From the IMG/VR virus record IMGVR_UViG_3300049460_000312, positions 219,374-283,373 of that record: a stretch of DNA of 64,000 nt. The stretch is one strand, 5' to 3'. Each line of letters starts with the position of its first letter. Position 1 is the stretch's first letter. The notes below the pieces were generated by a model. That model did no database searches. It had not been told where the DNA came from and saw only the letters and a list, made by a program, of their open reading frames with translations. This document shows, one piece after another, positions 30,592 through 39,669 of this stretch. The position numbers and the translations under genes were made by a program.

Positions 30592-31245
30592 TTAGACGTC
30601 CAGCGTCGCCGGGATCACCGGCAGGTCAGCCGCAACAGTAGCGGCATCAACCGCTTCCTTCAGGGTCCAGCTTGCTCCATAGACCGCGGAGACGCGCTGG
30701 AAAGCCGCGTTCGACATGGCCACGATCGCGTTGGCGGTAGCCATCACGACCTTGTTTTCGAGCGTCCGGAACGGCAGGGTCTGGTCACCCTGACCGGCGG
30801 CGATAAAACCGTCCGCCGTGACCCGCAGACCCGTGATGTTCAGACAGTCGCGCTCGCGCAGCTGCACGCCGAGCACACCATCAGTGCCACCGAAGTCGTA
30901 CTGGAAACCTTCACCCAGCTTGGCATCGCGCAGCGTGTCGATCTGTGTTGAGAGTGCCGCCTTCTGCGTGGTGAGCATGCCCGCCAGTTCATCGGTGGTG
31001 TAGTCACGCACGGCCCATTTCTGGGTCCACACACCATCGATCTGTTCGGGTTTGTCTTCAGTGACTACGTCGCCAGTCGGCGACGGGGCCGACTGCACTA
31101 CCGAATAACCGAGGTCTTCGATGAGCGATTCGTCCGGCTCCGCCGCGAAGCTGATCGTCGGATTGTCCTGACGGACCTTGAACAACGAGACCGGATACTC
31201 CAGTGTCTCGTTGTTGATCAGCAGGGTTGCTGCAGTGATTTTCAT
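30592..31245 (-). CDS. Tail fibre assembly chaperone (DUF4376-like)
   Basis: YPVS...E..P...DG.W.Q.W N-domain, then RD....GF.Y...QLR..D..NITG...FRT.EN; directly downstream of the fibre gene. Confidence 0.75.
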   Translation of the reverse strand: MKITAATLLINNETLEYPVSLFKVRQDNPTISFAAEPDESLIEDLGYSVVQSAPSPTGDVVTEDKPEQIDGVWTQKWAVRDYTTDELAGMLTTQKAALSTQIDTLRDAKLGEGFQYDFGGTDGVLGVQLRERDCLNITGLRVTADGFIAAGQGDQTLPFRTLENKVVMATANAIVAMSNAAFQRVSAVYGASWTLKEAVDAATVAADLPVIPATLDV

Positions 31246-31297: not shown

Positions 31298-34200
31298 TTA
31301 GGCCGTCGCGCCCACCGAGCCCGTCCACTTCGTGCCATCCCACAAGAGGATAACGTTGGTGTACGTCGCGCCCAGCGTCGGTGCCGTACCGCCGGACCAG
31401 CTGATGCTGCCCGGCCAGGTGATTGCAGCGGCGTTACCCGTCACGGCGATCACGACCGTCATGGCCCGGTTTGCACCCGGGGCATTCACGAATGCCAGCG
31501 TCTTGGCCGTTGCCGCGCTCACAGTGAATGCCTGGTTCGCAGCCAAGTCCAAGTTGGCTGTCGTCGCCACGATCGGCAGATCGTAACGGTCCAGACGCTT
31601 CAGACCCACCGTGGTGCCGTTGTTGTAGGCCACGTAGTAGGCGCTGTCATTCGGCGCCAACGGGGTCGTCAGCGTTGCCACGTCCGTCCAGTTGCCACCC
31701 TTTTGCACGTAGGCCTTTGCGTCATTCGGCGCAGCCACCGTGGCCAAGGTCGAGAGATCGGTCCAGTTACCGCCCTTCTGAACATACGCCTTCGCGTCAT
31801 TCGGCGCTTTCGTATCCGTCAGCGTCGACAGGTCCACCCACGCACCCGTCTTCTGTACGTAGGCTTTCGTGTCGTTCGGAGCCGGCGTGAAGGCCGTCCA
31901 TGCACCATCCTTACGGAGATACAGGCCATGGTCGAGCGGAGCTTCGCCAACAGCCGGAGCCGGCAGCGGCACCCACGCACCGTTCTCACGAACGTACGGC
32001 GTGTCGTCGAGGTTGGCATCGTAGACGTTACCACCGCCCAGATAACCCAGCCAGCTCCAGGCCACCGTGGTGGTCTTCTGGAAGAAGCGCAGTGTCGAGC
32101 TGTTGAGGAAGTAGTCACCCACCACCCCGTCAGCCGGATTCGGATCACGGCCGAGCACAATCCAGCGCGTGCCTTGGTCACCCTTATCGCCCTTCAAACC
32201 TTGCAGACCCTGGTCACCCTTCAGACCTTGCAGACCTTGCAGACCGCGATCACCCTTGGGACCCTGAATCGGACCCACATCGATGAACGCGGAACCGGTC
32301 CACGCCCAGCCATGCAGCGTGTCGGACGCGATGTACATATCGCCCGCATTGGTAGCCGAGCCCGGCAGAGCCGCGCTATTGGCCACCGTGCCAAGAATCT
32401 TGACGCCCGGACCCATCGGACCCGTATCGCCTTGATCACCCTTGTCACCGGTGTCACCCTTCAGACCTTGAACGCCTTGAAGACCTTGGTCGCCTTGGAT
32501 GCCTTGGAGACCCTGGTCTCCCTTATCACCCTTGTCGCCCTTCCACTGTCCCACATCCACCCAGACCGTACCGTTGTACGAGTAAAGGTGATCGCCCACG
32601 CGGTAAGCATCACCTTGCGTGTTGCCCGAGACTGGGAGGTCACCCGAGGTCGCAACAGTGCCGAGGATCTTGACGTTGTTACCGGCTGTGCCAGTATCGC
32701 CCTTATCCCCCTTCACGCCTTGCAAACCCTGAATGCCCTGAATACCTTGCAAACCGGTATCGCCCTTATCCCCCTTGTCACCCTTCAGGCCCTGGAGACC
32801 CTGGATACCCTGATCGCCCTTCGGACCTTGAATCTGGCCCAAATCGGTGAATGCTGCACCCGTCCAGCCCCAGAAGTGGCCCTGGATCAGATAACCATCA
32901 CCGATGGCTTCAGTGGTGTGCGCTGGCAGTTGCGAGGAATCCGCGTACGTACCGAGAATCTTGATACCGGGACCGAGGTCACCCTTGACACCCTGGATAC
33001 CCTGAATACCCTGGATACCTTGATCGCCTTGGTCACCCTTATCGCCTTTATCGCCTTTGACACCCTGAATGCCCTGAATACCCTGGATACCTTGGTCACC
33101 CTTCGGGCCGACGAACGGACCTGCATCCACCCACGCGGTGTTCACGTAGATGAAGAGGTTCGAACCGACGATGTACGCGTCTTCTTGCGCCGGGTTGCCG
33201 GGTAGAGCAGCCTGATTCGCAACCGTACCCTTGATGACGATACCACGACCCATCGGGCCAGTCAGACCCACGTCACCCTTGGCGCCCTTCAGCGAAGCGA
33301 TCCATTGAGCCTGCGTACCCACGTAGCCGTTGTCGACTGCTGTCTGGTAAGCTGAGTCACCGGACACACCCACCAGCGAAGCCAACCACTGGGCCTGCGT
33401 ACCGACAAAGCCACCGGCGACTGCTGCCGTGTAAGCCGAGTCGCCTTGATCGCCCTTGTCACCCTTATCGCCCTTGACACCCTGGATACCCTGAATGCCT
33501 TGGTCACCCTTCGGGCCTTGCACCGGACCGACGTCGATAAACGCAGTGCCCGTCCATGCCCAACCGTGGAGGGTATCCGCGGCAATATACATATCGCCAG
33601 CGGTCGTCGACGAACCCGGCAGTGCGGAGCTCGTAGTCACCGTACCGAGGATCTTCACACCAGGACCCATTGGGCCTTGGATACCTTGCAGACCTTGGAT
33701 ACCCTGATCGCCCTTCGGGCCAACGAGGGTTGCCAACCATGCCGATTGCGAGCCCACAAAGCCGCTATCCAGCGCGAGCTGGTAAGCCGTTTTGCCCACG
33801 AGCGATTGCAGCCATGCGGCTTGCGTACCCACGAAACCATTGGCTTGCGCCACCTGGAACGCGGTCTTACCGTTGAGCGACGTGATCCACTGCGAGAGCG
33901 TCATCGTGCCCGGGATCAGCCCCGCATCCTTCGCGAGCTGGTAAGCGGACTTACCGTCCGGCCCCACCTGACCCACCGGCACCCAGTTCGTGCCATCCCA
34001 CACCCACATCACGGCGTCAATGATGAACGCGTCGCCTGCGGTGTTGCCAGCCGGACCCGGCGGCAGATCACCCACGGTCTGGAACGAACCCAGCACCTTC
34101 AGGCCGATACCATCTGCACCATGCAACGACGCGAGCCAGTCATCGGCTGTGCCGCTGAACCCAGCGATCAACGCGAGGTCATAGGCCGACTTACCGTCCG

Positions 34201-34879
34201 GGCCTTGCAGGTTACCGAGATAGGTCCAGGCGCCACCCGACAGCGCCCAGAATTGCGGTCCGATCAGGTAGCAGTCACCTTCTTGCGATTCACCCACCGG
34301 CGGCAGGGAAGCCTGATCAGCAACTGCACCCAGCAGACGGGCACCATTACCCATCGCGCCTTGTGCGCCGGCGTCGCCCTTCACGCCTTTCAGCGAGGCC
34401 GTCCATTGCGCTTCCGTACCCACAAAGCCAGCCAGCACAGCGGACTCGTACGCGCTCTTGCCTGCAGCGCCGTCGTTGCCTGCCGTACCCGTATCGCCCT
34501 TGTCGCCTTTATCGCCTTTGAGACCCTGGATACCTTGGAGACCCTGGTCGCCTTTGACACCCTTCAGACTGGCGAGCCAGTTGGCTTGCGTATCGGCGTA
34601 ACCGCCAGCAACAGCGAGTTCGTACGCGGATTTACCGTTCGTACCATCTGCGCCCTTGGCACCCACCAGTGACGCGAGCCACTGGGCTTGGGTGCCGGCA
34701 TAGCCGCCGTCAACGGCGACCTGGTAAGCGGATTTCCCCGCTACCATCAACTGCGCCAGGGTGAACTTGACGTTCTTGCCACCCTGGATGGCCTCGACTA
34801 CTTCAGCACCGGTGATGGCCGATGCATCCGGAAGGTCAGAGATCCGGTAATACAGTGCGGGATCGAGTGTATCACTCAT
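31298..34879 (-). CDS. Collagen-like long tail fibre
   Basis: 1193 aa; Gly-X-Y tracts, 9 SAY..A...G..GT...W..SL repeats, 7-8 [KR]ILGTV...LP....GD.Y...W beta modules, foldon-like repeats, C-terminal tip domain. Confidence 0.9.
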   Translation of the reverse strand: MSDTLDPALYYRISDLPDASAITGAEVVEAIQGGKNVKFTLAQLMVAGKSAYQVAVDGGYAGTQAQWLASLVGAKGADGTNGKSAYELAVAGGYADTQANWLASLKGVKGDQGLQGIQGLKGDKGDKGDTGTAGNDGAAGKSAYESAVLAGFVGTEAQWTASLKGVKGDAGAQGAMGNGARLLGAVADQASLPPVGESQEGDCYLIGPQFWALSGGAWTYLGNLQGPDGKSAYDLALIAGFSGTADDWLASLHGADGIGLKVLGSFQTVGDLPPGPAGNTAGDAFIIDAVMWVWDGTNWVPVGQVGPDGKSAYQLAKDAGLIPGTMTLSQWITSLNGKTAFQVAQANGFVGTQAAWLQSLVGKTAYQLALDSGFVGSQSAWLATLVGPKGDQGIQGLQGIQGPMGPGVKILGTVTTSSALPGSSTTAGDMYIAADTLHGWAWTGTAFIDVGPVQGPKGDQGIQGIQGVKGDKGDKGDQGDSAYTAAVAGGFVGTQAQWLASLVGVSGDSAYQTAVDNGYVGTQAQWIASLKGAKGDVGLTGPMGRGIVIKGTVANQAALPGNPAQEDAYIVGSNLFIYVNTAWVDAGPFVGPKGDQGIQGIQGIQGVKGDKGDKGDQGDQGIQGIQGIQGVKGDLGPGIKILGTYADSSQLPAHTTEAIGDGYLIQGHFWGWTGAAFTDLGQIQGPKGDQGIQGLQGLKGDKGDKGDTGLQGIQGIQGLQGVKGDKGDTGTAGNNVKILGTVATSGDLPVSGNTQGDAYRVGDHLYSYNGTVWVDVGQWKGDKGDKGDQGLQGIQGDQGLQGVQGLKGDTGDKGDQGDTGPMGPGVKILGTVANSAALPGSATNAGDMYIASDTLHGWAWTGSAFIDVGPIQGPKGDRGLQGLQGLKGDQGLQGLKGDKGDQGTRWIVLGRDPNPADGVVGDYFLNSSTLRFFQKTTTVAWSWLGYLGGGNVYDANLDDTPYVRENGAWVPLPAPAVGEAPLDHGLYLRKDGAWTAFTPAPNDTKAYVQKTGAWVDLSTLTDTKAPNDAKAYVQKGGNWTDLSTLATVAAPNDAKAYVQKGGNWTDVATLTTPLAPNDSAYYVAYNNGTTVGLKRLDRYDLPIVATTANLDLAANQAFTVSAATAKTLAFVNAPGANRAMTVVIAVTGNAAAITWPGSISWSGGTAPTLGATYTNVILLWDGTKWTGSVGATA

Positions 34880-34902: not shown

Positions 34903-35454
34903 TCAGGAAACCGGCTTTTCGAGAACGCGGATGCGGCGTTTCTCATCGGTCGGGATATTACCGTCGACATTCCGCGCAGCAGGCTGCTTGGAGTTAGGCG
35001 CGTAGGGGAAGAAATAATCCCCAGCGAGCCAGGCGAGAGACGTGGTGGTGATTGTCAAGGTAAGACCATTGACCGGGATGCTGTCAAGAGCGGCATCCAC
35101 GACTTCCGAGGCCACGAGGTTCAGACCCAGACCCGCATTGATCTGCGGCAAGATAGCATGAACCGTGGTGGGAAAAGTCATGGGATCGAAGGGGACTAAT
35201 TCCCCTTCCGGCAAGCGCGAGAGCGCATCCATGCTCAGGCGCTTATAATTCACGTCCCGCGCCGCGTCACGTCGCGTCGTCGTATACGCTGTGGCCGCAA
35301 CCGTTGTCGAGCCAGCAACCGGAGCGGAACCTGCAGCAGGCGTTCCGAAATCGAAGTTGACGTTACTCGGCAACACCGGCGTCTGGGCGTTACGAATCAG
35401 TTGTGACAGGCGCACTTGGCTCGTGCCTTGATAGGGCTTGATACGACTTGCCAT
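34903..35454 (-). CDS. Putative virion protein associated with the fibre
   Basis: 183 aa; YKRL...TVHAILPQIN..LGL.L...EV.D motif typical of jumbo-phage virion proteins. Confidence 0.6.
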   Translation of the reverse strand: MASRIKPYQGTSQVRLSQLIRNAQTPVLPSNVNFDFGTPAAGSAPVAGSTTVAATAYTTTRRDAARDVNYKRLSMDALSRLPEGELVPFDPMTFPTTVHAILPQINAGLGLNLVASEVVDAALDSIPVNGLTLTITTTSLAWLAGDYFFPYAPNSKQPAARNVDGNIPTDEKRRIRVLEKPVS

Positions 35455-35617: not shown

Positions 35618-36829
35618 TTAGAAGCCGAGATCGATGTCCGCGCCAATCACTTCCTTCGACACGTTCTCGGTAGAAACGACGTTGACCAAATACTGGTTGT
35701 TATCCTGCTCCTGGGGCGACTTCTGGTTTTCGTTGATGTCGATCCAGTCACGCATATAGTTCAGCGGCAGCTGGGCCGGCATCGTGACAGCCAGACGCGT
35801 TTCGACTTCCTGCAGGATGCCGAACGAGATACACACCGCGCGGCCATTGAACAGCGTCCAGTCCTTGAGCTTCGGTTTGGTGGCGCCGGGCAGTTCGTCC
35901 CCGTCCGAGTGCACGTAGTCGAGCCAGCTCAGCTCACCGGTGAGCACTTCACACACCGCGTCGATCAGCATCGGTCGGATGGCCTTGAAGGCTGCGCGAC
36001 CCCAGGACGTTGCCATCAGGTGCTTGAACACCGCTTCGCCGAACGGCACGTGGTTGGTGTACTCGTCACGACAGATGGATTGCACCGCGGCACCGATCGG
36101 CTCAAACAGGCTCATCTCGCAGATCGCGAAGGTCACTGCGAACGAAGCCATGAACTGAATACGTTCCAGCATGTACACGGCAGCAATCAGTGCCACTACC
36201 GCTTGCTCGATCTCCGGCGTGCGGATACCCGTGGTCTGCCACTCCAGCGAAGCGAGACGAGCACGCTCCATGATCTTGCCGACGGCAGCCATGCGGCCAT
36301 GCGCTTCACGCACCGCCAAGATCTCGTTCAGGATCACCGACGGGTCTTCAAACGAACCCCGCACGATTTCCGAGTACGTCATCGCGTGCAGGTTTTCGTT
36401 GTCGATGATCCGACCGTAACCGACGCGCGACTCCGTGGCCGTACACAGCGGGATCAGGACGTCTGCCAGGCCCCGGGCGGCCGTGCTGTCGCCTTCCCAC
36501 TGCCAGGCCAGCGTACGGATCATCATCCGGTAGATAGACGGCGAGCAGGTCTTGAATTGCGCCACACACAACGAGTAGTCGAACTCGTTGTGCTTCCAGT
36601 CACTCGCCTTCAGCTCCTCGAAGAGGGTGAAGAGATCCGGGTAGGCCATGTGGATCGTATCGAGCAGGCCGCCGGGCTGCCCCAGGAACAGTTCGGGCTT
36701 CTGGTAGTCGTTCTTGCTGACGTTGAAGATGCGCGACGACAGTTGTTCTCCCCGCTGCGCCAGCGTGAGGTCGATGTAGTCGGCGGGGGCGGTTTCAGCC
36801 AGCGTGAGGTTGTTTGCGTTTTCGGACAT
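35618..36829 (-). CDS. nrdB: Ribonucleotide reductase class Ia beta subunit
   Basis: W..NEF, QWEGD, ENLHAMTY (radical Tyr), ERIQFMASF and RDEYTNH diiron ligands. Confidence 0.93.
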   Translation of the reverse strand: MSENANNLTLAETAPADYIDLTLAQRGEQLSSRIFNVSKNDYQKPELFLGQPGGLLDTIHMAYPDLFTLFEELKASDWKHNEFDYSLCVAQFKTCSPSIYRMMIRTLAWQWEGDSTAARGLADVLIPLCTATESRVGYGRIIDNENLHAMTYSEIVRGSFEDPSVILNEILAVREAHGRMAAVGKIMERARLASLEWQTTGIRTPEIEQAVVALIAAVYMLERIQFMASFAVTFAICEMSLFEPIGAAVQSICRDEYTNHVPFGEAVFKHLMATSWGRAAFKAIRPMLIDAVCEVLTGELSWLDYVHSDGDELPGATKPKLKDWTLFNGRAVCISFGILQEVETRLAVTMPAQLPLNYMRDWIDINENQKSPQEQDNNQYLVNVVSTENVSKEVIGADIDLGF

Positions 36830-36963
36830 GTTCTTACTGAGAGAGGGAGTGTGGAATGAGGTGCTGCTTCATGCAATACCGAAGGCCAGTATTTTCTCAT
36901 CCAGGAATTTTGAGGGCATAAACAGAGGGGAGATTTCTCTCCCCTCTGCCTAGGCTTGACTGC

Positions 36964-39669
36964 TTACAGCTTGCAGGCGCCGCCACCGCACGCGTCTTCC
37001 TGTTCGGATTCCACGTACTCCACCTCCGGCATGGTGAACAACTTGATCCACGCTTCGGTGTTCCAGACGTGCCAGCTATTGCCGATCAGGTAGCTATCGC
37101 CGAACTCGTCACCCGTGCTGGGTAAGTCACCGATACGCGAGACCGTACCACGGAACTTCACGAGACAGTCGGTGCCGAAAAGTTCACGTGCGACGGCGAA
37201 CTTCGCTTCTGCTTCCGCGTAAGCGGTCGGCTGCTTCACTTCAAACGACACGGCGTCTCCCGACGCTGCTTTACTGATGGCTTGCTGCGCCAGTGCTACC
37301 GGGGTCGGGACGTAGTGCTTGCTTTCTGCCGAGACAGCTTCGACAATTCCATGCGCTTCGGCTGCCGCTGCTGCTTCCGTAGCCGCTGCTGCTTCTGCTG
37401 CACCCGGAATCCGATCCACCAACGATTCCGCCTTGGCCGTATCCTTGACCTTCGGACGCAGCGTGTTGGTGTAGTAACGGCTCTTCATGCCACGCATGAT
37501 CATGTACAGGAAGGTGCGCACCACTTCTTCTTCCGAGACTTTCGTCTCACCCGACTTGAACTTGCGATACAGGTCCGCCGAGATCCCTTGGTCCGTCCAC
37601 TTCTGCGCGATTGCGTAGTCGTCGATCAGATCTTCGGTGGCGATGTCCCAGGCCGATTGATACGCGTCGCCGAGGATGTCGCCATCCACCGCGGCCCAAC
37701 GGATCATGTTGTTGTCGCCATCGCCCTTGGTGATCACGACCGACCGGATCGGGTAGATCGAGTTGGTCGACCCCAGCGCCTTCGACGACGACTCACCCGG
37801 CATCATCGACGACAGCACGCTGTGGCCGAGACCACCGTTGTCGATCAGTTCCTGCGAGAGCGCATCCCAGTCGTACACGTTGACGAAATCCGCGATCTTG
37901 TCGACGTTGCGGTTGTACGTCTTGAGCGGCGTCCAGCCTTCCGGCCACTTCGTCTTGTGCATCCATGGCGCGAGACCCCGTTCCTTCGAGATCTTGATCG
38001 ATGCCTTGATCAGCCAGTACATGTGACGTTCGAACACACGGTGAATTTCCTGCTTGCCTTCCACCGTGTCCCAGCGCAGACCCTTGCGCGCCATGTGCGT
38101 GGCGAGACCCATAATGCCGACGCCTGCGTTCATCCGTTGCTTGGCCGTGAAGCCCAGATGCGGAAACGGATACTTGCCGTTGAGGACCGTGAAGTCGATC
38201 ATCTTCAGCGCGTAATAACAGGCATCGAAGTAGTCAGCATCGTCCGTGATGTTCTCGATCGGAATCGCAGCCAGGTTACACATGGCGATTTCGCCCCGGC
38301 CGTGATCTTCTTCGCTGTACAGATCGCGCATGTCGTAGTACGGGGCCTGGATCTCGAAGATCTCCTGGCACAGATTCGACGAATGGATGCGATGCGTCGG
38401 CGTGATCTTGAACGGTGTGTGACGGTTTGCTTCATGGATGTTCGTGAGGTACGCTGTACCCGTGTCGAACGCTTCGGCAAACGAATGCAGCACCAGCTTG
38501 CGCGCCGAGATATACTTCTTCGGGAACAGCGGATCGTTCTCGTACTTGTTGTACAGCTCGACGAAGCCCTTGATGTCGTCCGAGAAGAACTTGTCAAAGA
38601 GATCCGGTGCCGAGAACTTGGTGAACGTAAAGATGTCTTCCGACTTCTGCACCTTCGCCGCGAACCACGGATTCACCAGCATCGAGAAGTGCAGTTCACG
38701 CAGCTGCTTGTCCGCCGGTTGCAGCGGATTGCGGTATTGCACAATGTCCACGGCTTCCGGATCGAAGGCCGAGAAGCTCGTCGTCCCAGCACCAGCACGG
38801 GCAGCTTGCTTGTTTGCGATGGTCGCTTCTGCATTCGCCTTGTAATAGCGATACTTGCCAGCGTGCTTGACCCGGCCCTTAGCGACGGGGTCGCCGACGG
38901 TACGCGTGTTGATGAACGAACCGAGCCCAGCCGAGTTCACGGTCATTTTGTACGCAATGTGGTCGCCAATCGCGAGCGACTCCGCGTCGTCGTCCGACGT
39001 GAAGATGCAGCACGAGGCGTAACCGTTGTGCGTTGAGCCCAGGTACAGGTAGTTCGGCGTCGGTGCCGACAGCTTCTTGCCCGAGAGCTTCTCGTAGAAC
39101 TTGCGCACGTGCATCATGCGCTGGGCCTGGGGTTCCTTCTCGGCCAGCTGCATCGCCATACGCATGTACAGGTGCTGCGGCGTCTCGAAGATCTCGCCCG
39201 TGGCGTGATTGCGAATCGCGTACTTGTCCCGAATCTGCTTCAGCGCAAATTCCGGATAGAAGAAATCCTTGTTGTGGTCGATCAGTGCTTCGATCTTCGT
39301 GTATTCCTCACGGGAATAGTCCAGCCTGCACATCAGGCCCAGTTCTTCACCGGCCAGACGCATGTGTTGTTCGTACACGGTCGGCGGAATGATAGAGCCG
39401 TACACGTCCTTGCGGTACACCGTTGCAAACAGGCGACCCGCCATCAGATAAGCCGGCCACGTACGGATCGCGAGCAACTCTTCGATAAGCGCGAGCATCA
39501 ATTCACGTGTGGAGGCCTTCTCGGGCAATTTCGCGACGGCAGCCAGCGCTGCCTGAGACCAGTCCACACGGTTCGAGAGGTGATTGGCGGCCCATTCACC
39601 CCAGCCGTTGAGCTTAGCCGGGATCATAGGCTCTTCGGAGCCGTTCCGCTTGATGAGAGTCTGCAACAT
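36964..39669 (-). CDS. nrdA: Ribonucleotide reductase class Ia alpha subunit with an extended C-terminal tail
   Basis: IKRNG cone-like N-terminus, SAPTP, ASCCIF, SNLCQEI, MCNL, MPGESSS, KSRYY, terminal CGGGAC. Confidence 0.95.
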   Translation of the reverse strand: MLQTLIKRNGSEEPMIPAKLNGWGEWAANHLSNRVDWSQAALAAVAKLPEKASTRELMLALIEELLAIRTWPAYLMAGRLFATVYRKDVYGSIIPPTVYEQHMRLAGEELGLMCRLDYSREEYTKIEALIDHNKDFFYPEFALKQIRDKYAIRNHATGEIFETPQHLYMRMAMQLAEKEPQAQRMMHVRKFYEKLSGKKLSAPTPNYLYLGSTHNGYASCCIFTSDDDAESLAIGDHIAYKMTVNSAGLGSFINTRTVGDPVAKGRVKHAGKYRYYKANAEATIANKQAARAGAGTTSFSAFDPEAVDIVQYRNPLQPADKQLRELHFSMLVNPWFAAKVQKSEDIFTFTKFSAPDLFDKFFSDDIKGFVELYNKYENDPLFPKKYISARKLVLHSFAEAFDTGTAYLTNIHEANRHTPFKITPTHRIHSSNLCQEIFEIQAPYYDMRDLYSEEDHGRGEIAMCNLAAIPIENITDDADYFDACYYALKMIDFTVLNGKYPFPHLGFTAKQRMNAGVGIMGLATHMARKGLRWDTVEGKQEIHRVFERHMYWLIKASIKISKERGLAPWMHKTKWPEGWTPLKTYNRNVDKIADFVNVYDWDALSQELIDNGGLGHSVLSSMMPGESSSKALGSTNSIYPIRSVVITKGDGDNNMIRWAAVDGDILGDAYQSAWDIATEDLIDDYAIAQKWTDQGISADLYRKFKSGETKVSEEEVVRTFLYMIMRGMKSRYYTNTLRPKVKDTAKAESLVDRIPGAAEAAAATEAAAAAEAHGIVEAVSAESKHYVPTPVALAQQAISKAASGDAVSFEVKQPTAYAEAEAKFAVARELFGTDCLVKFRGTVSRIGDLPSTGDEFGDSYLIGNSWHVWNTEAWIKLFTMPEVEYVESEQEDACGGGACKL

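What the first reader, a model, noticed from the sequence alone, without database searches (positions are those of the whole stretch)
36964..37450. NrdA carries a tail-fibre repeat module inside its redox-active C-terminal tail
Seen: after the YY pair, NrdA has an Ala-rich linker of about 90 aa, then KFRGTVSRIGDLPSTGDEFGDSYLIGNSWHVWNTEAWIKL (about 37039-37161), then the terminal CGGGAC. This segment matches the fibre module 2-5 kb away (e.g. KILGTVATSGDLPVSGNTQGDAYRVGDHLYSYNGTVWVDV; KVLGSFQTVGDLP...GDAFIIDAVMWVWDGTNWVPV). Known: the class Ia alpha tail is normally a short flexible arm that shuttles electrons from thioredoxin or glutaredoxin. Inference: domain capture from the fibre gene could oligomerise RNR, tether it to the virion, tail or phage nucleus, or recruit a reductant. 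I know of no described case.
Basis: partly seen in the sequence, partly recalled or inferred. Interest (0 to 1): 0.8.

Follow-up and report, generated by a model that had tools for sequence, protein, structure and literature searches.

The report
Tail-fibre module inside phage RNR tail
A small group of giant Ralstonia phages carries, inside the flexible electron-shuttling tail of their ribonucleotide reductase, one folded 45-residue bead of the kind otherwise found only as repeats in phage tail fibres. The bead is real, old and kept by selection, but what it does is untested.

Summary
NrdA (36964-39669, minus strand, 901 aa) is a complete class Ia alpha subunit. About 160 residues lie between its YY pair (732-733) and its terminal CGGGAC (894-899), against about 27 in its nearest relatives, the phiKZ-like NrdAs.

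The extra stretch has four parts:
- a fast-evolving Ala/Glu-rich linker that varies by indels;
- a conserved amphipathic helix (about 814-831);
- a four-stranded beta module (836-881);
- a 20-residue acidic disordered leash that carries the cysteine pair.

The module is homologous to the seven repeats of the collagen-like tail fibre 2-5 kb away. A profile of the fibre repeats hits it at 31-34 bits, against at most 8.2 bits in 5000 shuffles. A profile built from NrdA tails alone finds 178 proteins among 1.84 billion, nearly all multi-repeat fibre proteins. Foldseek gives TM 0.8-0.88 to phage fibre proteins.

Seven NrdA lineages carry the module, all Ripduovirus-like. It is under purifying selection and is supported by independent assemblies.

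A recent capture from the neighbouring fibre gene is not supported. There is no DNA similarity, and the NrdA modules form their own clade. The published RP31 virion proteome lists the fibre but not NrdA.

Function is inferred only. The most likely role is an interaction or self-association handle on an intact redox arm. This is a new variant of a known enzyme.

The parts
36964..39669 (-). nrdA, class Ia ribonucleotide reductase alpha subunit, 901 aa
   Evidence: ORF. Pfam lgN and lgC domains. NCBIfam TIGR02506 380.6 bits, cutoff 341. Collinear with E. coli R1 over residues 5-739 with the NLCxEI, C225- and C462-equivalent and YY motifs kept. 91% nt identity to Ralstonia phage FLC1-1B and 80% to RP12/RP31.
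37471..37476 (-). YY pair (aa 732-733), end of the canonical catalytic body
   Evidence: Aligns with E. coli Y730/Y731.
37231..37470 (-). Ala/Glu-rich variable linker (aa 734-813)
   Evidence: AF2 pLDDT below 50. Amino-acid identity is 23-38% between distant lineages, with length changes of up to about 28 aa. GC3 is 0.57, against 0.81 in the core.
37177..37230 (-). Conserved amphipathic helix preceding the module (aa about 814-831)
   Evidence: AF2 predicts a helix at pLDDT about 70. F824 is invariant, and G832 nearly so (replaced only in the P0011 fragment), across the NrdA tails.
37027..37164 (-). Tail-fibre-type beta module (aa 836-881), single copy
   Evidence: Fibre-repeat HMM E=6e-9. Shuffle control. 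PHROGs tail-fibre hits. Gap-free register with the fibre repeats. AF2 predicts four strands, pLDDT 90 with the mixed alignment and 70-79 with NrdA tails only. Foldseek BFVD TMq 0.8-0.88 to phage fibre and collagen-like proteins. dN/dS 0.11 against FLC1-1B.
36967..37026 (-). Acidic disordered leash with the redox cysteine pair (aa 882-901; C894 at 36988-36990, C899 at 36973-36975), ending CKL
   Evidence: The EYVESEQ-[ED]-D stretch is conserved in all seven lineages (one E-to-D change, in P0010) and leads into a cysteine pair spaced CxxxxC, CxxxC in P0003, then CKL. AF2 pLDDT about 33. phiKZ-like relatives end with C..G.CTL.
35618..36829 (-). nrdB, class Ia beta subunit, 403 aa
   Evidence: Pfam Ribonuc_red_sm. 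NCBIfam class Ia beta. Same gene order in all relatives.
34903..35454 (-). DUF7941 protein, 183 aa, between nrdB and the fibre gene
   Evidence: Pfam DUF7941 E=2e-12. PHROGs virion structural protein. DUF7941 proteins form fibres in phage Goslar (bioRxiv 10.64898/2026.04.21.720040).
31298..34879 (-). Collagen-like tail fibre, 1193 aa, with 7 modules and foldon-like repeats at the C-terminal end
   Evidence: Pfam Collagen and Fibritin_C. phrog_3904 E=4e-284. Modules lie at aa 179-226, 259-306, 407-455, 546-591, 638-685, 735-781 and 825-873, which is nt 34202-34345, 33962-34105, 33515-33661, 33107-33244, 32825-32968, 32537-32677 and 32261-32407. The RP31 orthologue ORF150 was detected in virions.
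30592..31245 (-). DUF4376 protein, 217 aa, downstream of the fibre gene
   Evidence: Pfam DUF4376. Syntenic in L008 and L007.

Best explanation
NrdA here is a working class Ia alpha subunit whose C-terminal redox arm was lengthened, once and long ago, by an in-frame insertion. This happened in the ancestor of the Ripduovirus-like Ralstonia jumbo phages. The arm now reads: catalytic body, YY, about 80 aa of flexible Ala/Glu-rich spacer, an amphipathic helix, one fibre-type four-stranded beta module, a 20-residue acidic disordered leash, and the CxxxxC-KL dithiol.

Shown: the homology of the module, its restriction to this clade, its predicted fold, purifying selection on it, and the intact cysteine pair at the extreme end.

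Inferred: the dithiol still shuttles electrons from host thioredoxin or glutaredoxin to the active site, because only the last 15-20 residues or so need to enter the site and they remain disordered. The helix plus module is a small folded bead retained as a protein-protein interaction handle. In every other context the module sits in homotrimeric fibres. The most likely action is therefore self-association of arms, which would cluster alpha2 dimers, or docking of the arm onto a partner surface.
For: Homology in both directions and by fold.

Insertion specific to this clade: phiKZ, 201phi2-1, PS119XW and Viktualia NrdAs (about 60% core identity) are 761-764 aa with a spacer of about 27 aa. Only Ripduovirus-type NrdAs carry the tail among 50,697 phage records and in two searches of 5.8 billion proteins.

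Single origin: the NrdA modules form one clade, 98/74.

Selection: module dN/dS is 0.11 against FLC1-1B. Amino-acid identity between distant lineages is 43-67% in the module, against 23-38% in the linker, which also gains and loses up to about 28 residues, yet no lineage has lost the module.

A bead on a string: linker pLDDT below 50, helix plus module 70-79, last 22 aa about 33.

The enzyme looks intact and nrdB is adjacent. A long arm is compatible with shuttling: fungal R1 has flexible arms of 120-135 aa that enter the neighbouring subunit's site (PMC3618301).

The module otherwise occurs almost only in multi-copy fibre proteins. Of the 150 representatives listed, 130 have G-X-Y runs, and the others that were checked carry phage tail domains.
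Against: No experiment or multimer model addresses the oligomeric state or any partner.

In NrdA the module lacks the collagen flanks that enforce trimers in fibres. The conserved helix may instead cover the sheet and make the unit monomeric.

In the whole FLC1-1B genome the module occurs only in NrdA and two fibres, so no other enzyme shares it as an obvious partner. No phage redoxin was found by a crude motif scan.

Purifying selection on a folded insert can arise merely because an unfolded insert would expose the essential tail to proteolysis.

Only seven lineages are known, so 'never lost' is weak evidence.
Confidence: 0.45

Rival explanations
1. Tolerated passenger. A fibre-module-coding fragment landed in the one part of nrdA that tolerates insertions, the disordered arm. 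It persists without a positive function. Selection only keeps it folded and soluble so that the essential terminal cysteines are not degraded or aggregated.
For: The arm is the permissive site: long variable arms exist in fungi and the linker here changes freely. The module evolves faster than the core (43-67% against 77-88% identity). No partner with the same module exists other than the fibres. Phage RNR genes are frequent targets of mobile DNA (PMC3045599 abstract).
Against: The linker next to the module has repeated indels, yet none of the seven lineages removed the module. A helix and an acidic leash specific to this clade are conserved around it (F824 invariant, EYVESEQ-[ED]-D nearly so), which suggests a co-adapted unit. 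dN/dS is 0.11 in the closest pair.
Confidence: 0.3
2. Link to fibres or virions. The NrdA module co-assembles with, or binds to, the homologous modules of the tail-fibre chains. This would either carry RNR on particles or let late fibre synthesis sequester the redox arm and switch dNTP synthesis off.
For: The only other carriers of the module in the genome are the tail fibres. nrdA, nrdB and the fibre cluster are adjacent and co-oriented in all relatives.
Against: The RP31 virion LC-MS/MS lists the fibre ORF150 but not NrdA ORF153, although band-based MS can miss low-copy proteins. The NrdA modules are only 22-35% identical to the fibre modules and form a separate clade. They also lack collagen flanks, so mixed trimers seem unlikely.
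Confidence: 0.1
3. Reductant or subunit docking. The helix plus module binds host thioredoxin or glutaredoxin, NrdB, or the alpha body near the active site. This would raise the local concentration of the dithiol where it is needed.
For: The module sits only about 12-20 residues from the cysteine pair, so it must approach both the active site and the reductant in every cycle. The acidic leash is highly conserved. No phage-encoded redoxin was detected, so a host reductant must be used.
Against: The module family has no known redoxin-binding member, and every other context is structural. There is no co-variation or modelling evidence. Related phiKZ-like enzymes manage with a plain tail.
Confidence: 0.1
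4. Chance resemblance, mis-assembly or mis-called ORF.
For: None found.
Against: statistics; fold; seven lineages; independent contigs without indels; purifying selection in frame through to the conserved CKL end.
Confidence: 0.01

Closest known systems
Class Ia NrdA of E. coli and of phiKZ-like (Chimalliviridae) phages
   Same: Same domain order, catalytic motifs, YY pair, terminal Cys-x4-Cys and adjacent nrdB. Core identity to the phiKZ-like enzymes is about 60%.
   Different: Those enzymes have about 25-27 disordered residues between YY and the cysteines. Here there are about 160, including a folded helix plus beta module.
Repeat module of collagen-like phage tail fibres (PHROGs 15437 and 3904; no Pfam or NCBIfam model)
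   Same: Same length, register, conserved LP...GD.Y.I...W.W....W pattern and predicted four-stranded fold.
   Different: In fibres the module comes in 2-14 copies flanked by G-X-Y triple-helix segments. In NrdA it is single, flanked by a helix and an acidic leash, and has its own conserved residues (FGDS, VWN, KL).
Long flexible C-terminal arm of fungal RNR large subunits (yeast Rnr1, Neurospora UN-24)
   Same: An arm of 120-135 aa lies between the body and the terminal cysteine pair and still serves the shuttle. In UN-24 the variable arm carries a second function, nonself recognition (PMC3618301).
   Different: The fungal arm is described as flexible and variable, not as a folded module borrowed from a structural protein. 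It was not tested for homology here. It is eukaryotic, not phage.
Folded C-terminal domains of class II RNRs (IscU-like domain, zinc finger)
   Same: They show that RNR C-termini can hold folded domains tied to turnover or oligomerisation (PMC9669993; PMC5704485).
   Different: Different class, different folds, cysteine-rich and metal-binding. The same survey describes class I tails as disordered.
Fragmented phage NrdA assembled through interaction domains derived from a mobile element
   Same: A precedent for a phage nrdA acquiring foreign protein-interaction segments (PMC3045599 abstract).
   Different: That case concerns a split gene and domains from a mobile element, not a fibre module inside the redox arm.

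Membership tests
Class Ia RNR alpha subunit (NrdA) | All-alpha and ten-stranded barrel domains | tested here: met
   Pfam PF00317 and PF02867. TIGR02506 above its cutoff.
Class Ia RNR alpha subunit (NrdA) | Active-site cysteines, the Asn/Cys/Glu finger-loop motif and the YY radical-transfer pair | tested here: met
   Residue-by-residue alignment to E. coli R1 4r1r_A. YY at 732-733.
Class Ia RNR alpha subunit (NrdA) | C-terminal redox cysteine pair at the extreme end | tested here: met
   C894 and C899, ending CKL, conserved in all lineages.
Class Ia RNR alpha subunit (NrdA) | Partner ferritin-like beta subunit encoded alongside | tested here: met
   nrdB at 35618-36829.
Class Ia RNR alpha subunit (NrdA) | N-terminal ATP-cone | tested here: inconclusive
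   Residues 5-100 align with the E. coli R1 N-terminus, but Pfam reported no ATP-cone hit at E<=0.01.
Class Ia RNR alpha subunit (NrdA) | Short disordered tail between YY and the cysteines | tested here: not met
   About 160 aa with a folded unit, against about 27 aa in the nearest relatives.
Class Ia RNR alpha subunit (NrdA) | Enzymatic activity and reduction by thioredoxin or glutaredoxin | not testable with these tools
   Needs biochemistry.
Tail-fibre repeat module (PHROGs 15437/3904 type) | Significant profile match in both directions | tested here: met
Tail-fibre repeat module (PHROGs 15437/3904 type) | Same predicted fold | tested here: met
   AF2 pLDDT 90. Foldseek BFVD probability 1.0, TMq 0.8-0.88, rmsd 0.7-1.6 A to fibre proteins, including the RP12 fibre.
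Tail-fibre repeat module (PHROGs 15437/3904 type) | Tandem copies interspersed with collagen G-X-Y runs in a virion protein | tested here: not met
   Single copy, no G-X-Y runs in NrdA. NrdA is absent from the RP31 virion proteome.
Tail-fibre repeat module (PHROGs 15437/3904 type) | Trimeric assembly | not testable with these tools
   Only single-chain prediction was available.
Foldon (Fibritin_C) | Profile similarity to the foldon hairpin | tested here: not met
   hhalign of the module against the fibre's own foldon-like repeats gives probability 19% over 20 columns.
DUF2793 tail-fibre domain | Sequence match to a solved member (JBD30, 8rk3) | tested here: inconclusive
   E=0.024, made up of fragmentary stretches.

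The most novel reading that the evidence does not exclude
The fibre-type module makes the redox arms of this phage RNR assemble with each other or with the homologous modules of nascent tail-fibre chains. dNTP synthesis would then be organised into higher-order clusters, or be shut down by sequestration of the arm when late structural proteins accumulate. This would be a direct physical coupling between nucleotide supply and virion morphogenesis in a phiKZ-related jumbo phage.
Probability: 0.1. Interest if true: 0.75.

Novelty: new variant of a known kind. Interest (0 to 1): 0.55.

Why it matters
Class I RNR tails are treated as plain disordered dithiol arms. A survey of 6,779 alpha-subunit sequences reported folded C-terminal domains only in class II (PMC9669993). 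This is a naturally occurring class Ia enzyme with a folded structural-protein module placed 12-20 residues from the shuttle cysteines.

It offers three things:
- a test of how much cargo the swinging arm tolerates;
- a possible new way of organising or regulating RNR in jumbo-phage infection;
- a clean example of a virion-fibre module reused in a metabolic enzyme.

It also defines a small beta module that is widespread in phage fibres but has no Pfam or NCBIfam model and no solved structure. The practical stakes are modest unless a function is shown.

Tried and rejected
1. Pfam and NCBIfam on the tail and the fibre: no model covers the module.
2. PDB by profile: only weak, fragmentary hits (DUF2793 protein 8rk3 at E=0.024, NEQ068, villin).
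3. PDB by fold: nothing significant. The top hit was a 34-residue chain of the phiKZ capsid, 8y6v_I, at E=1. Its identity could not be established from the paper.
4. Foldon relationship: hhalign probability 19%. It is a resemblance only.
5. ESM Atlas: scores of 0.81 or less, below the lead threshold.
6. Recent capture from the adjacent fibre: no DNA similarity, and the modules are not nested among the phages' own fibre repeats.
7. Linker as out-of-frame collagen repeat: the other frames show no G-X-Y pattern.
8. A shared module marking a multi-enzyme complex: six-frame scan of the whole FLC1-1B genome finds the module only in NrdA and two fibres.
9. Phage-encoded thioredoxin, glutaredoxin or NrdH: none by a crude motif scan. 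This is not a sensitive test.
10. Virion association: NrdA is absent from the RP31 virion MS.
11. Word-based searches of the 5.8-billion-protein set for more carriers returned only 4 and 2 clusters. The 50%-identity representative library hides full-length carriers inside clusters of ordinary NrdAs, so the count of seven lineages is a lower bound.
12. The nearest non-NrdA relative of the module (the P0090 family) is a small ORF in a phage morphogenesis and lysis region. It gives no functional clue.
Full report
Source and context. The window comes from a jumbo phage of Ralstonia. The nrdA region is 91% identical in DNA to phages FLC1-1B and FLC4-3B and 80% to RP12 and RP31, genus Ripduovirus. 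The RP12/RP31 paper describes these as phiKZ-related (PMC5468394). On the minus strand the order is DNA ligase, several small ORFs, nrdA (36964-39669), nrdB (35618-36829), a DUF7941 protein (34903-35454), a collagen-like tail fibre (31298-34879) and a DUF4376 protein (30592-31245). The same order is found in FLC1-1B, RP12 and two metagenomic contigs, L007 and L008.

The observation. NrdA is 901 aa. It has the two Pfam RNR large-subunit domains, ending at residue 733. It passes the NCBIfam NrdE_NrdA cutoff. It aligns collinearly with E. coli R1 from residue 5 to 739, and keeps the active-site cysteines, the NLCxEI motif and the YY pair. After YY (732-733) the chain runs on for 168 residues and ends with CGGGACKL (C894, C899). 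The fibre ORF holds seven copies of a module of about 46 residues between collagen G-X-Y runs, followed by foldon-like repeats.

Is the match real? A profile built from the seven fibre copies hits the NrdA tail at E=6e-9 (31 bits, 40 of 47 positions). Among 631 stop-to-stop segments of the window it hits nothing else significantly outside the fibre. Five thousand shuffles of the tail reach at most 8.2 bits, against 34.2 for the real sequence. PHROGs tail-fibre families match the same residues independently. NrdA modules and fibre repeats align without internal gaps in the same register.

The reverse test is the strongest. A profile made only from four NrdA tails, with no fibre sequence in it, was run against 1.84 billion representative proteins. 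It returns 178 hits at E<=0.001 and 40 at E<=1e-10. Of the 150 listed, 130 contain collagen-like runs and most have 2-14 matched stretches. Those without collagen that were checked carry phage tail domains (PTR, Phage_tail_C, He_PIG).

AlphaFold2 folds the module as four beta strands. The pLDDT is 90 with the mixed alignment and 70-79 with NrdA tails only. Foldseek against predicted viral structures gives probability 1.0 and TM 0.8-0.88 to modules of tail fibre, collagen-like and virion structural proteins, the RP12 fibre among them. No solved structure matches significantly, and no Pfam or NCBIfam model covers the module.

Is it an artefact? No. The same architecture is present in FLC1-1B, FLC4-3B, RP12 and RP31. 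It is also in two full-length metagenomic NrdAs (P0003, P0004) and two C-terminal fragments (P0010, P0011), and P0011 is followed by nrdB. Contigs from independent rhizosphere metagenome runs cross the insertion with only point differences and no indels. One example is a 998-base contig of run X2 covering 36733-37730.

How unusual is it? The nearest NrdAs outside this group are those of phiKZ, 201phi2-1, PS119XW and Viktualia, at about 60% identity in the core. They are 761-764 aa, with about 27 residues between YY and a C..G.CTL end. Among 50,697 phage records only the Ripduovirus-type NrdAs carry the tail, and the other hits to it are fibre proteins. Two word-based searches of 5.8 billion proteins found four and two clusters. 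The count of seven lineages is a lower bound, because the 50%-identity library can hide carriers inside clusters of ordinary NrdAs.

In the literature held here, the survey of RNR insertions and extensions describes class I C-termini as disordered double-cysteine tails. It finds folded C-terminal domains only in class II (PMC9669993). The RP12/RP31 paper lists the gene without comment. Long arms are not unprecedented in themselves. Fungal R1 proteins have flexible C-terminal arms of 120-135 aa, and in Neurospora UN-24 that arm carries a nonself-recognition function (PMC3618301).

Anatomy of the arm. AlphaFold2 of residues 715-901 with six NrdA tails gives three zones:
- low confidence for the Ala/Glu-rich stretch, drawn as weak helices;
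- a helix at about 814-831 followed by the four strands at 838-878, with pLDDT 70-79;
- a disordered last 22 residues.

Conservation follows the same boundaries. Between distant lineages the linker is 23-38% identical and changes length by up to about 28 residues. The module is 43-67% identical and the core 77-88%. The final acidic stretch, EYVESEQED, varies only by one E-to-D change, and it is followed by the cysteine pair. F824, L836, LP, GDS, W.VWN and W874 are invariant across all seven lineages, while G832 and the K876-L877 pair vary only in the two fragments P0010 and P0011. dN/dS for the module is 0.11 in the closest pair, and synonymous sites are near saturation in the others. The linker has a lower GC3 (0.57) than the core (0.81) or the module (0.74).

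Origin. All five phages with full context have 6-7 modules at corresponding positions in their fibres. In a tree the fibre modules group by position rather than by phage, so the fibre array predates these phages. The seven NrdA modules form one clade (98/74). It lies outside the own-fibre positional classes and next to a small phage structural-region protein family, P0090. With 47 columns the deeper branching is unresolved. There is no nucleotide similarity between the tail and the fibre gene. The data therefore support one old acquisition of a fibre-type module. They do not identify the neighbouring gene as the donor.

What it may do. The enzyme looks intact, and the cysteine pair remains on a disordered end. 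The dithiol shuttle is therefore most likely preserved, as it is in fungal enzymes with long arms. Three things argue that the bead is kept for a reason: no lineage has lost it despite frequent linker indels, dN/dS is low, and a clade-specific helix and acidic leash are conserved around it. This evidence is thin.

In every other context the module is part of homotrimeric fibres. Self-association of arms, which would cluster alpha2 dimers, is therefore my first guess, and docking to a partner surface is the second. Against this, the collagen flanks that force trimers are absent in NrdA, and the preceding helix may simply cover the sheet.

The whole FLC1-1B genome contains the module only in NrdA and two fibres. 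There is thus no sign of a multi-enzyme complex built on a shared module. A crude motif scan finds no phage redoxin. Virion tethering is disfavoured, since the RP31 virion proteome has the fibre but not NrdA. In the related phage PhiPA3 the ordinary NrdA is diffuse in the cytoplasm (PMC10245766). Localisation of the module-bearing enzyme is unknown.

Verdict. The specific donor and all proposed functions remain open. This is a new variant of a known enzyme, restricted to one clade of soil and rhizosphere jumbo phages. It will interest RNR and phage-domain-evolution specialists, and its wider importance depends on showing a function.

Noticed in passing
window 34903-35454 (-): A small DUF7941 protein sits between nrdB and the fibre gene, and L007 has two such genes. 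A 2026 preprint on phage Goslar reports that DUF7941 proteins assemble head-to-tail into a 'fibre cloud' around chimallivirus virions. This cluster may therefore encode more than one kind of fibre.
   Followed up: partly
window 31298-34879 (-), fibre aa 407-455 and 825-873: Two of the seven fibre modules, with their flanks, are near-identical to each other and pair up in the tree (98/94). In RP12, L008 and FLC1-1B the corresponding copies also fall in one clade. This suggests an intragenic duplication or gene conversion within the fibre.
   Followed up: partly
window 31298-31900 (-), fibre aa about 950-1080: The C-terminal part of the fibre has five foldon-like repeats (pattern AP.D..AYV.K.G.W..L, Pfam Fibritin_C E=8e-6) instead of a single terminal foldon.
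   Followed up: partly
L007:12850-14056: In the metagenomic relative L007, nrdB is called as two ORFs (164 and 226 aa), both with Ribonuc_red_sm hits. This could be a split gene, a frameshift or a sequencing error.
   Followed up: no
FLC1-1B (LC819005.1) 147873-151940: FLC1-1B has a second collagen-like fibre paralogue (gp156, 7 modules) about 3.4 kb beyond the first. The 64-kb window shows only one module-bearing fibre.
   Followed up: partly
window 39255-39669 (-), NrdA aa 1-139: The N-terminus aligns with the ATP-cone region of E. coli R1, but Pfam reports no ATP-cone at E<=0.01. Allosteric activity regulation may be degenerate in this phage enzyme.
   Followed up: no
window 37231-37470 (-): The Ala/Glu-rich linker has a GC3 of 0.57, against 0.81 in the NrdA core. 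This fits relaxed constraint or a different origin of this stretch.
   Followed up: partly
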